Source: Dimorphilus gyrociliatus (taxonomy: Eukaryota; Animalia; Annelida). Taken from it: DNA of 64,000 nt. The stretch spans positions 310,001-374,000 of the forward strand of contig CAJFCJ010000021.1 of assembly GCA_904063045.1 (NCBI GenBank). The letters are read 5' to 3'. The position numbers and the translations under genes were made by a program. Each line of letters begins with the position of its first letter. Within the stretch, counting starts at the first letter, position 1. The notes under the pieces are model-generated. The model was not told the origin of the DNA. It searched no databases and saw only the letters and a program-made list of their open reading frames with translations. Below, in pieces: positions 45,689 through 50,631 of the stretch.

Positions 45689-47377
45689 TCAATATCTAAA
45701 ATTCTGTGCGTCTATTTCGTAGCAAGGTTCAACATAATTTTCGGATCTAAGATGCTCTGGTATCGAAATCGGACAATTGTAGCATGAATCATTCTCTTCA
45801 TATATATAGTCTAATGATTTTATTGTTACTTTGTCATTCCCTTCGTTTAGGTCTATATTTAAAAAATTTTCAAGTAAACTACCAAAATTAATAGCATCTT
45901 TTAGAATCCAGTTATTACCAAATAGATTATCTAAACTCCCAGAAAATGGTCTTTTTATGTGTTTCCTAACTACATAGGAGCTTAAAAGACATAGAGATTT
46001 AATTGTTGGTAATCCGTTGTCGTTTAACCATTTGCGTTTTGGACTAATGTTACCATTTAGTCCTAACCACATAAGCTTTGATAACTCCTTATCATTTAAA
46101 TATCGTACGTATGAGTTAAATAAACAACCATGTTTTATAAGTAATGCATATGTATATTTAGCGAATTTTAAAAATTCATCCAAATATTCTTCTTCGATTG
46201 ATAGTTTTTTAAAGCAATACTTGAAGAATAATTTAGAAAATGGCTCTAAAGATAATTTATACATTTGCGAAAATTTCATCAATAGATTAGATAATCTCAT
46301 TAATCTTATTGCTCTATCATCCGAATGAAAATTATGTGATATTCCTTTAAACCATTGGCGAAGAATAGTTAGATATAGTTTCTTAGCAAAGGATCTTCTA
46401 AAAGTTCCAATACTTAAGTATACCTCCAACTCTTTAAAGCTATTTCCAGGCAATCTGAAATTATAAACTGCAACATCACAAAGGTCTTCTGCATCATTCG
46501 TAAAGTCCTTTTCTATAAATTGTATGAGCTTGTCAGAATAGTGTCGTACTAAATAGATACCAATAGATCTACTCTGATTTTCGTGTCTCAGATCGTTATA
46601 CCATTGATAAAAATAAGAGTCAATAATCAATTTAAATGAATTCTTCCTGTCATTTATTAGAAAATCAAAAATATCTGGCCTATCGTACTCTAAACTGATG
46701 TCAATCAATTCTTCGACAGTTCGTTTATCGTCTTTCTCAGCTAGATAGTCCCACAATATCCGGAAATGTTCCACCTTCATTAAAGAGAGCATACAGGCTT
46801 TAAATAATCTAAAGCAATAGGTTTTCCTGCTTTTTAAATTACTTTTTTGTATGATCATTTCTAATATGTAAATTTTTTCATTCTCAAATATCGATTTTAG
46901 ACAGTCTATAACACCAATCCTCCTGTCTTCCATATACGATCGAAAATCAAAAGTATATCTACTCAAAAGATACTTTGTCGATTGGAAACACATACTTTTA
47001 CAAGAATAAAATAGAAGGCCATTAATTACGCTAGATCTCCAAAAGTTAGCTTCGTCCAAGTTGATTTTATCAAGGAATAATCTTAAATTTCTTGGATTAT
47101 CATTCTTAATTAATAAGCTAATGATTGGCCAATAGTTTTTCTTGTAAAAGTAGAAGAAATCAGTAGGATTTGGATCAGTTTTAACATCAGTGTAGAAATA
47201 ATGTTGATAATTAGCTAGTTTTATCATATTCCTAATACCTTTTGAATTTGATTCAACACGACGAAGAATACTAGAGAAAGCTAAAGGATTATCCTCTAAA
47301 ACTTTCTTTAAAGTTCCATTTTTATTGTCTAAAGCAATATGAAAAGGTATAAACTTGCCTTTTTCTTCCAAACTCAT
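45689..47377 (-). CDS. Intronless divergent ankyrin-repeat / SOCS-box (ASB-like) protein
   Basis: 562-aa single ORF. Degenerate ankyrin-like units (PFHIALDNKNGTLKKVL, LLFYSCKSMCFQSTKYLL, LIDISLEYDRPDIFDFLI) and a C-terminal SOCS-box-like LPTIKSLCLLSSYVVRKHI...LDNL...LKDAI. Confidence 0.65.
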   Translation of the reverse strand: MSLEEKGKFIPFHIALDNKNGTLKKVLEDNPLAFSSILRRVESNSKGIRNMIKLANYQHYFYTDVKTDPNPTDFFYFYKKNYWPIISLLIKNDNPRNLRLFLDKINLDEANFWRSSVINGLLFYSCKSMCFQSTKYLLSRYTFDFRSYMEDRRIGVIDCLKSIFENEKIYILEMIIQKSNLKSRKTYCFRLFKACMLSLMKVEHFRILWDYLAEKDDKRTVEELIDISLEYDRPDIFDFLINDRKNSFKLIIDSYFYQWYNDLRHENQSRSIGIYLVRHYSDKLIQFIEKDFTNDAEDLCDVAVYNFRLPGNSFKELEVYLSIGTFRRSFAKKLYLTILRQWFKGISHNFHSDDRAIRLMRLSNLLMKFSQMYKLSLEPFSKLFFKYCFKKLSIEEEYLDEFLKFAKYTYALLIKHGCLFNSYVRYLNDKELSKLMWLGLNGNISPKRKWLNDNGLPTIKSLCLLSSYVVRKHIKRPFSGSLDNLFGNNWILKDAINFGSLLENFLNIDLNEGNDKVTIKSLDYIYEENDSCYNCPISIPEHLRSENYVEPCYEIDAQNFRY

Positions 47378-48140
47378 GTTTTCCGAAAGAAAAAGAAAAC
47401 TTATTATATAATATTTTCTTAACTTTTTGGAAAATATGCTTTGGATAGGAAAAAATGGAAGAAGCTAAATTTCTTTAGTTTTTAGATATTTTGAATTGAA
47501 AATTTTGAATAGATTTAATTAACTTGAATTTTAAAAAGAAAAAAAAACAAAGTATATATGAAAACAGAAAAAAGAAACAATAAAAAACGAAAGAGAAAAG
47601 TATAATTAACATTTATTGTGTAATACAACCTTGATAACTCATTGTAGTCATTAGTCTATACTATTCTGTAGTAACCAAAGGTTCAAGGCTTCAATTTTAA
47701 ATGATCTATTAACATTTTTGCTCCTTTTGTTTTTGTTTTCATTGTTAAAACTATAGTTAAAAAAGTAAAAAATATACGTTTGCATAATAGTCATTTTATT
47801 CAAGGTTTTCTCTCTTTTGTTTGTAAAATAAATGTATCAGTGCACAGGTGTTTTTCATATTAAAATGACCTTGATTTCTGATATTTTTTACAGATATACT
47901 ATATTATTATATTATTAAGTGATAACGATCAAGGTCATATTTTATCCTATTTCATTCTTTCGTTCCTTTTTTACGAACGCCTTTGTTTTAGCTCTTCTTT
48001 CCTTTTTTACGATTATCGTTAATACAGCCAATGGCATGTATAACTTTTTAAAAAAATCTTAAAATCTTGACAAATTGTTGACATGAAATTTCAGCTTTTT
48101 TTCTTCTTTGAATGAGATTTTCGCCTCTTTTGAATAAGTT

Positions 48141-50171
48141 TTATAAACAAATAGTTGGCCAAGCGCTACCCTCTACTTCTTTATCGTTGTCGTTCACCAC
48201 CGAATGTTTGATAAAATCGTCTGTAAATGACGCTAAATAGACTTTTTGTTCCTCTCTATGTCTTTTTTGAACTTCTCGAACCATTTTATCCCATTCTAAT
48301 TTTATATCGGCTAATTTCTTTTGTAGTTGCAGTAATTCTTTATTCTGTCGTTTAATTAGAGATTGAAAATCGATAGTTGCTTGATCTTCTACAACAAAGA
48401 CTTGATTACAGTATATTTCATTTGTGAAAGTTTTCTCGCCGGATTTCTCCTCTTGACCTAAATTGAGTACATTCCTCTTTAACTCCTCTGCATTTGCTTT
48501 ACTTTGATTATTTTTAATTTGTCCAATGTCTCTCTCTTCGTCTGCCAATCTCTTCTGATTTTTAATTTTTTGACGTCTGTTGTGTTTAGGACGCCATATC
48601 TTAATTTCCCATATGATGAATAAGATAAAGACAGCAGCCCAGACAAGAGCGGCATACCACATGAACATCAGAGTTGTTGGTTGAAAAATATTTTGAGCGT
48701 TATCTGCTGCATTTGTTTTATAGATTATCAAAGGCTTTGTCCACTTATCTATTTCATCGACAAACTCTTGCTTATGAACTAGAACAGTTGTCTTTAAACA
48801 AGCTCGTACGGACGGAGATAGTCCTTTAAATAGGACTCCGTGTAGGACAGGATTGCTATAAAGTATATGGAATATATCAATGTATACTTTAAAGATTAGA
48901 GGAAGAAGAGTAAAGAGTTCTTACTCTAGAGTTTGCTCAAGTAGAGTACTCGCGTTCATTTTTTCCTGTTGAGCTGCAAATGAGAAATGGTCTATTAAGC
49001 CACCCCTAGCTTCCTTGTTGTTCATCTTTTCCAAAATTTCGTCGAATGAGTTACACACTATGTAGTAAAGAGAAAATTTTTAAGTTTTCTGTCTTGGATA
49101 TTAACTGTTTCATAGTAAATATTTAAATATTACTTACAAACAGGATCAGCCCCTTTCTCTAAAGCTCTTCGAAAATCTTCACTACCATTTAGGACTGCAA
49201 CCTTTGACCCTTCAATTCCAGAAGTAACAAGAGATTCTTGAGTTAAAACCGTTGTAACAGTAGCCGTAAAAACACTCAAAATTGTTATTCCAACAACAAT
49301 CCATACTAGACCATAGATTCTGGCTTGAACTGATTTTGGCGTTGTATCACCATATCCAACAGTTGTCATTGTCACAAAAGCCCACCAGAAACCTTCCCAG
49401 AAACCTCTAAGAAAAGGTTTGGGAAAGTTTGTTGGATTCCATAATCTATCCAGTAGCCATATGATTATACCAGAGTATGCGGCACCCAATATGATGAGAG
49501 TTAATAGGGGCCATCCTGAGTTGATTGTAAAGGCAAGAGGTTAAAGTACATAAAAGATAGAATTAAAACTCTAAAATATACAAAATATATCTATGTTCAT
49601 TAGTAGTTAAATAGATAGATTATTGCTTATATAGACTATAATTGTTTGGTGGAAACTTGTTTTTCTACAAATATCACCTTCCACCTTTACAACCTTGAAC
49701 TATAACTGCCATTAAATCCGATCCGACACTTGCCGCTCTCTTTTCAAAGAAGTAAATAGATGTAGAAACTTCGATGAGAGGTAAAAAGAATGTTGATTCA
49801 TCTTGAAAGCCAATAGAACTAGCCAGAGTAGAGGACGCAGAAAACGGCAAAAAAGCCATGACTTTACCATTTGAAACGGAAGATGCGGCGTCTCTCTCAA
49901 AGTCTATTGGGTTAACAACCCTTCTAAAATCCCATGTAGAATTTGAAAACGTATTAGGACATTCCTTATGTAGTCTTAATATTGCTGCTTGAAAGAAACC
50001 CTGAAAGGGTATAGGATATTGAGATGCGCTTTTATTAAAAATTGTATACGGTTCAATCTGCCACCAGGTAATTTTAGTTTGGTCAACTTCATCTTTACAA
50101 GATACCAACAAAGCGAAAATTGAAATATATATGAGAATTTCAAAACAAATTGAAGCACGAATGAACAACAT
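48141..50171 (-). CDS. Ligand-gated channel with iGluR topology and K+ selectivity filter (GluR0/AvGluR1-like)
   Basis: Four exons joined in phase. Order: signal peptide; S1-like lobe (WWQIEPY...FFLPLIEVSTSIYF); M1; pore helix and filter FWWAFVTMTTVGYGD (49346-49366 = TTVGYGD); M2 (SVFTATVTTVL); S2-like lobe (VAVLNGS...GGLID...HGVLFKGLSPSVR); extra TM (LMFMWYAALVWAAVFILFIIW); coiled-coil tail. Confidence 0.85.
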
Positions 50172-50597
50172 GAGTTCACTAAGAGATCGAAACCTATTCC
50201 CGACTGCAAAAAGTTTCAATTTCTCCCATTTTTTTGCAACAGCTGTTACAAACAAGTCCTAATGATTTTTATAATTTTCTTTTATTTTAAAAAATATGTA
50301 GGATAAAATATTCAAAAGGTGGATGGCAACAACCTATTCTATTAAGTTAGTGTGTTGAACTGATCTTTGTCCACAAATTAGGCACTATTAGGCTTCTTAG
50401 AGTTGAAGTTAAAAAGAGAACTAGGCTATGAGGTTTCTGGGGGAATATACGTAAATAGCTTGTTGTTTTCCTCTACTTTTCAACGAATTCTCTCGCTAAA
50501 TATATATATATATATATATATATATTCTCTACATTTCCCCGTTCCCTTACCCTTCCTCGTCTCTCTATCTCTCTTTTTCTCTCTCTGTCTCTCTCTC

Positions 50598-50631
<34 letters not shown>

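What the first reader, a model, noticed from the sequence alone, without database searches (positions are those of the whole stretch)
48141..50171. Animal gene with glutamate-receptor architecture but a K+-channel filter and a degenerate ligand site
Seen: the spliced gene encodes signal peptide - S1 lobe - M1 - pore loop TTVGYGD - M2 - S2 lobe - third TM - coiled coil, with no amino-terminal domain. Established: this split binding-protein topology defines iGluRs, whose pores normally lack GYG. The K+-selective cyanobacterial GluR0 (two TMs) and bdelloid rotifer AvGluR1 (TXVGYG) are the known intermediates. Inference: this is an intron-containing, hence resident, animal member of that intermediate class. 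The S1 segment that carries the invariant carboxylate-binding Arg in iGluRs (T-x-x-R) here reads PFSASSTLASSIG with no Arg, and the SYTANLAAF gate reads VFTATVTTV. It may therefore be a K+-selective (hyperpolarising) channel gated by a non-amino-acid ligand, or an accessory subunit.
Basis: partly seen in the sequence, partly recalled or inferred. Interest (0 to 1): 0.88.

Follow-up and report, generated by a model that had tools for sequence, protein, structure and literature searches.

The report
Animal glutamate-receptor-shaped potassium channel gene
This is a real, spliced and transcribed gene of the small annelid Dimorphilus gyrociliatus that encodes a glutamate-receptor-shaped channel with an intact potassium-channel filter, and it belongs to an old, unstudied animal family that may be directly ligand-gated inhibitory receptors.

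Summary
A four-exon minus-strand gene (ATG 50171, stop 48141) encodes 567 aa. An RNA-derived contig removes all three GT-AG introns, and the protein is identical to DgyrCDS12770 of Dimorphilus gyrociliatus.

An AlphaFold model (pLDDT 83) gives signal peptide, S1, M1, pore loop TTVGYGD, M2, S2, a third TM and a long C-terminal helix, with no amino-terminal domain. S1+S2 superpose on the GluR0 ligand-binding core (Z 21.5). Residues 24-487 align to GluA2 407-880.

The gene is not a one-off. Its relatives occur in cnidarians (many copies), a flatworm, annelids and hemichordates, and group apart from bacterial GluR0. TTVGYGD is essentially invariant across 56 aligned members.

The carboxylate-binding Arg is missing family-wide and is often Asp or Glu (Ala117 here). 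The binding site is not simply degenerate, though. The lobe-2 Ser/Thr, the amino-binding Asp308 and the aromatic lid are conserved.

My best reading (0.55) is a tetrameric, K+-selective channel gated by an extracellular ligand that is not a standard alpha-amino acid.

I found no paper on the family. This scan already flagged a paralogue elsewhere in the same genome (s1-080312). Ligand, selectivity and gating are all untested.

The parts
47630..50524 (-). Approximate transcript extent: long 5' UTR, CDS and a 3' UTR of about 510 nt
   Evidence: One 2568-nt RNA-derived contig covers the whole laid stretch 47800-50450 at 100% identity and runs 170 and 74 nt beyond its two ends. The outer ends are extrapolated and were not read.
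49694..50171 (-). Coding exon 1: start codon, signal-like hydrophobic segment (aa 1-24), S1 lobe (aa 27-148) and pre-M1 helix
   Evidence: The donor CAAG|GT at 49694/49693 is fixed by the transcript joint. The first in-frame ATG after an upstream stop is at 50171.
49138..49515 (-). Coding exon 2: M1 (49448-49513), pore helix and filter (49346-49414), M2 with the FTATVTTVLT gate motif (49235-49330), and the start of S2 including the VLNGSED motif
   Evidence: Ion_trans_2 54 bits and Lig_chan 41.9 bits on this exon alone..
49346..49366 (-). K+ selectivity filter TTVGYGD (aa 210-216), preceded by WW-x5 as in canonical K+ channels
   Evidence: In 56 family members T210, T211, G213, G215 and D216 are invariant, and V212 and Y214 are each 55 of 56.
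48925..49057 (-). Coding exon 3: middle of the S2 lobe, including GGLIDHF with Asp308, the counterpart of the alpha-amino-binding Asp/Glu
48141..48855 (-). Coding exon 4: end of S2, third TM or M4 (48600-48680), basic juxtamembrane helix, disordered linker, conserved C-terminal helix (48201-48383) and stop codon (48141-48143)
49516..49693 (-). Intron 1 (178 nt, GT-AG)
   Evidence: joint 49514/49693 with cut +1.
49058..49137 (-). Intron 2 (80 nt, GT-AG)
48856..48924 (-). Intron 3 (69 nt, GT-AG)

Best explanation
DgyrCDS12770 is a pore-forming subunit of a tetrameric channel built like an iGluR that lacks the amino-terminal domain.

Proposed topology: an extracellular two-lobed clamshell (S1+S2) sits on an inverted K+-channel pore (M1, re-entrant loop TTVGYGD, M2). 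A third TM and a cytoplasmic helix follow; the helix probably helps assembly or anchoring.

Proposed mechanism, inferred by analogy with GluR0 and iGluRs: an extracellular small molecule closes the clamshell, which pulls on the short M2-S2 and S1-M1 linkers. This opens the bundle crossing at FTATVTTVLT. K+ then leaves through a canonical filter and hyperpolarises the cell.

The ligand is probably not a standard alpha-amino acid. The carboxylate-binding Arg and Thr of lobe 1 are gone across the family, and the Arg position is often acidic. The ammonium-binding Asp and the Ser/Thr-Glu-Glu motif of lobe 2 are kept, which fits an amine or other cationic ligand.

Shown: gene structure, transcription, fold, family membership, and the conservation pattern.
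Inferred: tetramer, topology, K+ selectivity, ligand gating, and ligand class.
For: - Spliced transcript with three GT-AG introns.
- Protein identical to the annotated DgyrCDS12770.
- Pfam Ion_trans_2 and Lig_chan both above threshold.
- AlphaFold model with mean pLDDT 83.4.
- Foldseek: AMPA-receptor LBD-TMD chains at E about 1e-14 over roughly 440 columns. Model residues 24-487 align to GluA2 407-880.
- VIA-align: GluR0 core 1ii5 at Z 21.5, rmsd 2.9 A, 212 of 221 residues; Nostoc GluR0 at Z 20.7; glutamine-binding protein at about Z 20; AvGluR1 core at Z 18.1.
- Profile-profile match to bacterial GluR0-type proteins: probability 100%, E 4.9e-50, 294 columns from S1 through the pore into S2.
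- S2 profile finds GlnPQ (1e-13) and the GluR0 core (2.4e-6) in the PDB.
- TTVGYGD, the WW pair, Pro219 and Gly235 are invariant or nearly so in 56 members.
- Ser/Thr271 in 50 of 56, Asp/Glu308 in 54 of 56, Tyr/Phe42 in 53 of 56, while the Arg-equivalent column reads D14 S8 E7 A5 N4 R2.
- The animal family is monophyletic against bacterial GluR0 (SH-aLRT 100), with one bilaterian clade (89).
- Four hydrophobic segments sit at the expected places.
- Engineering precedent: a non-amino-acid binding protein (ectoine-binding EhuB) can gate the GluR0 pore (bioRxiv 10.1101/2021.01.27.428399).
Against: - No functional data exist for any family member.
- Neither S1 nor S2 reaches the Pfam SBP_bac_3 or Lig_chan-Glu_bd thresholds, and the S1 profile finds nothing in the PDB by sequence. 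The lobe-1 half of the site is poorly conserved.
- This copy departs from the family consensus at several points. It has His335 for Tyr, Phe310 for Tyr, Thr217 for Arg/Lys, and Pro72 where 43 of 56 members have the second Cys of a CC pair. It has no basic residue at all in the S1 loop. It could therefore be a modulatory subunit and not a ligand-binding one.
- A GYG signature does not guarantee high K+ selectivity.
- An N-G-S glycosylation sequon lies inside the lobe-2 binding motif.
- The monomer model says nothing about stoichiometry or the coiled coil.
Confidence: 0.55

Rival explanations
1. It is an amino-acid-gated K+ channel after all, an animal GluR0. The ligand carboxylate would be held by something other than the canonical Arg, such as backbone amides, a nearby Lys in other members, or a bound ion.
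For: The closest structure is the glutamate-bound GluR0 core. The amino-binding Asp308 and Ser/Thr271 are conserved. Many cnidarian members carry a Lys 4-6 residues after the conserved Pro (PIYGDMK, PITGKS). AvGluR1 is reported to use chloride ions as part of ligand binding (as described in PMC12226733).
Against: This copy has no Lys or Arg anywhere in the 21-residue S1 loop. At the Arg-equivalent column the family has Asp or Glu in 21 of 56 members, which should repel a carboxylate. The Thr equivalent is also not conserved.
Confidence: 0.17
2. It is a non-ligand-binding, modulatory or obligate heteromeric subunit. Alternatively it is a K+ channel whose clamshell is a structural or protein-binding module, gated by something other than a small extracellular ligand.
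For: This copy deviates from the consensus at several cleft and disulfide positions. At least two paralogues exist in the same genome. Cnidarian relatives carry large CUB, Ig, FN3 or discoidin ectodomains in front of S1, which hints at protein or matrix partners. The conserved C-terminal helix could mediate co-assembly.
Against: Lobe-2 pocket residues are conserved across more than 500 My of divergence, which a purely structural clamshell would not require. The pore and gate motifs are fully intact in this copy.
Confidence: 0.2
3. It is a weakly selective or non-selective cation channel despite the GYG motif, and so depolarising. Or it is an intracellular K+ channel with no receptor role.
For: A signature sequence alone does not fix selectivity. 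The N-terminal hydrophobic segment could act as a signal anchor and not be cleaved.
Against: The whole pore-helix and filter block, WW-x5-TTVGYGD-x2-P, matches canonical K+ channels and is invariant in the family. GluR0 with the same motif is K+ selective (PMC12332018).
Confidence: 0.08

Closest known systems
Bacterial GluR0 (Synechocystis Slr1257, Nostoc GluR0): glutamate-gated K+ channel
   Same: It has a split class-II binding-protein clamshell around an inverted two-TM K+ pore with TXVGYGD. It has the same M2 end motif (FTAxxxxxLT). It is the best structural match (Z 21.5 and 20.7) and the best profile match (E 4.9e-50).
   Different: GluR0 has no third TM and no cytoplasmic helix. It keeps the Thr/Arg/Asp amino-acid triad (T129 and R132 nearly invariant in 18 bacterial sequences) and it is prokaryotic. 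The animal family forms a separate clade, has introns and a signal peptide, and lacks the Arg and Thr.
AvGluR1 of the bdelloid rotifer Adineta vaga
   Same: It is an animal receptor of iGluR type with a TXVGYG pore signature, described as resembling bacterial iGluRs and as K+-preferring (PMC12226733, PMC12332018).
   Different: AvGluR1 is described as having the full eukaryotic iGluR architecture and is gated by amino acids. The gene here has no ATD and no carboxylate-binding Arg. The family's S2 profile does not find the AvGluR1 core in the PDB at E<=10, although it does find GluR0 cores. Structurally AvGluR1 scores lower (Z 18.1) than GluR0. A joint tree could not be built.
Eukaryotic iGluRs (AMPA, kainate, NMDA, delta, epsilon, lambda; plant GLRs; insect IRs)
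   Same: The domain order S1-M1-P-M3-S2-M4 is the same, the Lig_chan HMM is met, and the model superposes on LBD-TMD chains of AMPA receptors and on AtGLR3.4. Like many insect IRs it lacks an ATD.
   Different: It has a K+ filter in place of the Q/R/N pore, and a GluR0-like gate motif in place of SYTANLAAF. It has no Arg and a conserved C-terminal helix. The metazoan iGluR phylogeny (PMC6307864) does not mention potassium or GluR0 in its text, so I take it that this family was not covered there.
Canonical K+ channels (KcsA, KvAP, Shaker, Lmo2059)
   Same: They are the best sequence matches in the PDB for the pore (E 1e-9 to 1e-17), with identical WW-x5-TTVGYGD spacing.
   Different: The pore is inserted between the two halves of an extracellular binding domain, so it must be inverted in the membrane. 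There is no voltage sensor, RCK domain or T1 domain.

Membership tests
iGluR superfamily (Pfam Lig_chan, S1-M1-P-M3-S2-M4) | Lig_chan (PF00060) HMM above the gathering score | tested here: met
   37.7 bits against a cut-off of 30.8 for the whole protein; 41.9 bits for exon 2 alone.
iGluR superfamily (Pfam Lig_chan, S1-M1-P-M3-S2-M4) | Two-lobed binding domain split by the pore module, followed by a further TM (M4) | tested here: met
   Model residues 27-370 superpose on binding cores at Z 18-21.5. Residues 24-487 align to GluA2 407-880. A fourth hydrophobic segment lies at aa 389-418.
iGluR superfamily (Pfam Lig_chan, S1-M1-P-M3-S2-M4) | Amino-terminal domain (ANF_receptor type), present in most eukaryotic classes | tested here: not met
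   S1 starts about 3 residues after the signal-like segment, and there is no Pfam hit.
iGluR superfamily (Pfam Lig_chan, S1-M1-P-M3-S2-M4) | Arg in S1 that binds the ligand alpha-carboxylate | tested here: not met
   hhalign maps bacterial R132 to Ala117. The family column holds R in 2 of 56 members.
iGluR superfamily (Pfam Lig_chan, S1-M1-P-M3-S2-M4) | Acidic residue in S2 that binds the ligand alpha-amino group | tested here: met
   Asp308 aligns with the D of the bacterial VYDAP motif. The family has 49 D and 5 E of 56.
iGluR superfamily (Pfam Lig_chan, S1-M1-P-M3-S2-M4) | SYTANLAAF gate motif and a non-K+ (Q/R/N) pore loop | tested here: not met
   The gate reads SVFTATVTTVLT, sharing only x-T-A-x5-L-T. 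The pore loop is TTVGYGD.
Bacterial GluR0-type channels | Homology across S1, pore and S2 | tested here: met
   hhalign probability 100%, E 4.9e-50, 294 columns. The family profile scores bacterial GluR0-type proteins at 127-172 bits, against no more than 83 bits for plain K+ channels.
Bacterial GluR0-type channels | Only two TMs, nothing after S2 | tested here: not met
   A third TM plus about 150 cytoplasmic residues follow S2.
Bacterial GluR0-type channels | SBP_bac_3 and Lig_chan-Glu_bd HMMs matched | tested here: not met
   Neither is reported for P0170 at E<=1. All bacterial comparators carry them.
Bacterial GluR0-type channels | Placement inside the bacterial clade | tested here: not met
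   Animal sequences form their own clade, SH-aLRT 100 (quick search).
AvGluR1-like receptors | Close sequence kinship of the binding core | tested here: not met
   The S2 profile lists 51 PDB sequences at E<=10, and none is AvGluR1.
AvGluR1-like receptors | TXVGYG pore signature in an animal iGluR-type protein | tested here: met
   TTVGYGD at aa 210-216.
K+ channels (Ion_trans_2) | Ion_trans_2 HMM and a complete pore-helix and filter signature | tested here: met
   49-54 bits against a cut-off of 22.5. WW-x5-TTVGYGD.
K+ channels (Ion_trans_2) | Measured K+ selectivity and tetrameric assembly | not testable with these tools
   Needs electrophysiology and biochemistry or a multimer model.
Unnamed animal family (GluR0-like core + M4 + C-terminal helix) | Full-length similarity, shared invariant residues, and the shared post-M4 motif IWEFxxWRPxHxRR plus the C-terminal RQNxELL helix | tested here: met
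   31-36% identity over 430-530 residues to hemichordate and other members. Profile E 1.8e-122. C-terminal alignment. Sister to the Capitella gene.

The most novel reading that the evidence does not exclude
Animals other than vertebrates, insects and nematodes keep an ancient class of ionotropic receptors that couple an extracellular clamshell directly to a true K+ pore. That would be fast, G-protein-independent, hyperpolarising chemoreception or neurotransmission, gated by an amine or other non-amino-acid ligand. Cnidarian members add adhesion-type ectodomains (CUB, Ig, FN3, discoidin).
Probability: 0.3. Interest if true: 0.9.

Novelty: new variant of a known kind. Interest (0 to 1): 0.72.

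Why it matters
To my knowledge, fast inhibition in animals is carried by ligand-gated chloride channels, and K+-mediated inhibition goes through G proteins.

A natural, directly ligand-gated K+ receptor family in animals would be a new class of inhibitory ionotropic receptor. It would also document what the step between a bacterial GluR0 and modern iGluRs looked like: an M4 has been added, the K+ filter is still in place, and there is no ATD yet. It would offer a compact natural scaffold for chemogenetic silencing as well.

The family is large in cnidarians and present in hemichordates, annelids and a flatworm. Testing it is therefore straightforward by expression in oocytes, and localisation in Dimorphilus, Nematostella or Saccoglossus could follow.

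Tried and rejected
- My first exon-1 donor (49685) was in frame but wrong. The transcript uses 49694.
- Pfam on exons 1, 3 and 4 separately gave nothing.
- The S1-only family profile found nothing in the PDB.
- phmmer of the whole protein against the PDB sees only K+ channel pores.
- I could not obtain AvGluR1 or eukaryotic iGluR sequences as session objects. The word-indexed searches returned only family members, bacterial GluR0-type proteins and K+ channels.
- The paper on the AvGluR1 core (PMC4096996) is not held.
- Eight literature searches found no description of the animal family.
- There is no tandem paralogue in the window.
- Pseudogene or annotation artefact: rejected, because of the intact frame, the transcript and the conservation.
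- Recent horizontal transfer from bacteria: rejected, because of the introns and the tree, which roughly follows species relationships.
The pocket was mapped through alignment only, and no tetramer or coiled-coil prediction was possible.
Full report
**Observation**

Translating the minus strand of 48100-50300 shows four open stretches that join through GT-AG sites. One public run holds 78% of the sampled words of the stretch. Laying it gave a single 2568-nt contig, 100% identical, that skips exactly 48856-48924, 49058-49137 and 49516-49693. Those skips, all with GT..AG ends on the gene's strand, show that the contig derives from spliced RNA and that all four exons sit on one transcript.

The contig corrected my exon-1 donor from 49685 to 49694. 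The resulting 567-aa protein is letter-for-letter DgyrCDS12770 of the annelid Dimorphilus gyrociliatus, so the organism and the public gene model are settled.

**Anatomy**

Hydropathy gives four hydrophobic segments: aa 1-27, 151-184, 221-251 and 389-418.

Pfam finds Ion_trans_2 (49 bits), Ion_trans and Lig_chan (37.7 bits against a cut-off of 30.8) on aa 163-257, and nothing on the flanks.

An AlphaFold2 model built on a 56-sequence family alignment has mean pLDDT 83.4. Only aa 463-488 and 550-567 are disordered.

Structure comparisons agree with one another:
- Foldseek against the PDB puts LBD-TMD chains of AMPA receptors first, at E about 1e-14 over roughly 440 columns.
- Against Swiss-Prot models, residues 24-487 align to GluA2 407-880, which is everything after the amino-terminal domain.
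- VIA-align on the same candidates puts the GluR0 ligand-binding core first: 1ii5, Z 21.5, rmsd 2.9 A, 212 of 221 residues, model range 27-370. Next come Nostoc GluR0 (Z 20.7), glutamine-binding proteins (about Z 20), AtGLR3.4 (Z 18.8 over 302 residues) and the AvGluR1 core (Z 18.1).

The flanking segments are therefore the two halves of a class-II periplasmic-binding-protein clamshell. The refutation criterion "does not model as a split PBP fold" fails.

**Family**

A full HMMER scan with exon 2 found 1275 cluster representatives at E<=1e-10. The best are 440-600-aa proteins with the pore at the same relative position. The named ones come from several phyla:
- Hemichordates: Saccoglossus, Ptychodera and Glandiceps.
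- Annelids: Owenia, and Capitella, where the gene is split into two adjacent models (188994 and 188993) that share 91% and 68% identity with exon 2 here.
- The flatworm Macrostomum.
- Many cnidarians: Nematostella, corals, Hydra, Hydractinia and Rhopilema.

All are labelled "uncharacterized" or "Potassium channel domain-containing protein".

Dimorphilus has at least two further paralogues, DgyrCDS8531 and DgyrCDS8581. None lies in this window. Some cnidarian members carry CUB+Ig, FN3 or discoidin ectodomains in front of S1, up to 4000 aa long. The ESM Atlas places the protein next to cnidarian clusters of 54-154 members.

In a maximum-likelihood tree (quick search, LG+C20, 67 rows) the animal proteins separate from 15 bacterial GluR0-type proteins with SH-aLRT 100. 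All bilaterian sequences form one clade (89). The window's protein is sister to the Capitella gene (94), within a group that also holds the hemichordates, Macrostomum and one unnamed sequence. The other two Dimorphilus genes sit with Owenia in a second subclade. Together with the three introns, this points to vertical inheritance from at least the cnidarian-bilaterian ancestor.

**Nearest relatives outside the family**

The family profile scores bacterial SBP_bac_3+Lig_chan+Ion_trans_2 proteins at 127-172 bits and plain K+ channels at no more than 83 bits. Profile-profile comparison with 18 bacterial GluR0-type sequences gives probability 100%, E 4.9e-50 and 294 aligned columns, running from the first S1 strand through the pore to the end of S2.

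A profile of S2 alone finds bacterial binding proteins and both GluR0 cores in the PDB: GlnPQ at 1e-13, 1ii5 at 2.4e-6 and 2pyy at 1.2e-5. It finds no eukaryotic iGluR or AvGluR1 core among the 51 sequences at E<=10. S1 alone finds nothing.

So the core is GluR0-like in sequence and fold. The extra TM after S2 is the feature it shares with eukaryotic iGluRs. AvGluR1 is not a close relative by these measures.

**Pore and gate**

T210, T211, G213, G215, D216, W203, W204, P219 and G235 are invariant in 56 members. V212 and Y214 are each 55 of 56. The spacing WW-x5-TTVGYGD is that of canonical K+ channels, which are the best PDB sequence matches. This is strong indirect evidence for a K+-selective filter, but it is not a measurement.

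The end of M2, S-V-F-T-A-T-V-T-T-V-L-T, follows the bacterial consensus S-x-F-T-A-x-I-A-S-x-L-T-V. F242, T243 and T247 are each 51 of 56, and A244 is 46 of 56. It is the recognisable counterpart of SYTANLAAF and not a degenerate version.

**Binding site**

hhalign maps the nearly invariant bacterial T129 and R132 to Ser113 and Ala117 here. Across the family those columns are not conserved. The Arg column reads D14, S8, E7, A5, N4, R2. This copy has no Lys or Arg in the whole 21-residue loop after the conserved Pro109 (55 of 56 aligned members), whereas many cnidarian members have a Lys 4-6 residues after it.

Other classical pocket positions are conserved:
- Tyr/Phe42 in the PPY strand, 53 of 56.
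- Ser/Thr271, 50 of 56.
- Glu272, 33 of 56.
- Glu/Asp273, 40 of 56.
- Asp/Glu308, 54 of 56.
- Tyr335, 41 of 56 (His here).
- Gly336, 50 of 56.

The pattern is a maintained lobe-2 half-site with an acidic flavour plus a lost carboxylate clamp. I read this as selection for a ligand that carries an ammonium or cationic group but not an alpha-carboxylate. That is inference.

Four Cys are conserved in the family (C25, C71, C72, C349). This copy has Pro at 72.

**C-terminus**

After M4 there is a conserved basic motif (IWEFxxWRPxHxRR). After a variable linker comes a helix, LIxRQNxELxxLxxExxxFxxxWxxxxxxxxxRH, shared by annelid, hemichordate and cnidarian members but absent from DgyrCDS8531. A role in tetramer assembly or anchoring is plausible but untested.

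**Literature**

Eight full-text searches found nothing on an animal family of this kind.
- A 2025 review lists GluR0 and AvGluR1 as the known K+-signature receptors (PMC12332018).
- The metazoan iGluR phylogeny (PMC6307864) does not mention potassium or GluR0 in its text.
- A 2025 eukaryote-wide iGluR study treats AvGluR1 as the atypical bacterial-like case (PMC12226733).
- The Dimorphilus genome paper does not discuss the gene.

Absence from this library is not proof of absence from all journals.

**Earlier scan note**

Finding s1-080312, on another piece of the same genome, describes a paralogue. Its follow-up reached the same general reading. I used it as a lead for the organism and then verified that independently through the identical protein.

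**Verdict**

The gene belongs to a large family. Loss of the Arg is family-wide while half of the site is conserved. The gate is GluR0-like. AvGluR1 is not close kin. Function is unknown experimentally. I commit to an extracellular-ligand-gated, K+-selective tetramer with a non-amino-acid ligand at about 0.55.

Noticed in passing
window 45689-47377 (-): A 562-aa intronless ORF lies directly downstream on the same strand. Its ATG is only about 250 nt from the extrapolated 3' end of the channel transcript. It has no Pfam match at E<=0.1.
   Followed up: partly
window 50495-50630: (AT)n, (CT)n-rich and (GT)n microsatellites lie at or just upstream of the 5' end of the transcript contig. The 5' UTR is at least 280 nt long and probably about 350 nt.
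   Followed up: no
P0034, P0186, P0082, P0133 (cnidarian relatives): Some cnidarian family members carry CUB+Ig, FN3 or F5/8-type-C ectodomains in front of S1, up to about 4000 aa. CUB domains are otherwise known from Neto, an auxiliary subunit of kainate receptors.
   Followed up: partly
P0098 + P0136 (Capitella teleta CAPTEDRAFT_188994/188993): The Capitella orthologue is annotated as two adjacent gene models that break inside the TTVGYGD filter. This is probably a mis-split single gene.
   Followed up: no
P0010, P0013 (Macrostomum lignano): The flatworm members are named 'SGF29 C-terminal domain-containing protein' and are 706-976 aa long. These are probably fused gene models.
   Followed up: no
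window 49187-49195 (aa 269-271) and aa 72: An N-G-S glycosylation sequon sits inside the lobe-2 binding motif VLNGSED. This copy also has Pro where 43 of 56 relatives have the second Cys of a conserved CC pair.
   Followed up: partly
P0269 (250 aa, Logan assembly): A fragment 68% identical to the C-terminal 42% of this protein exists in another public assembly. It is likely from a related annelid.
   Followed up: no
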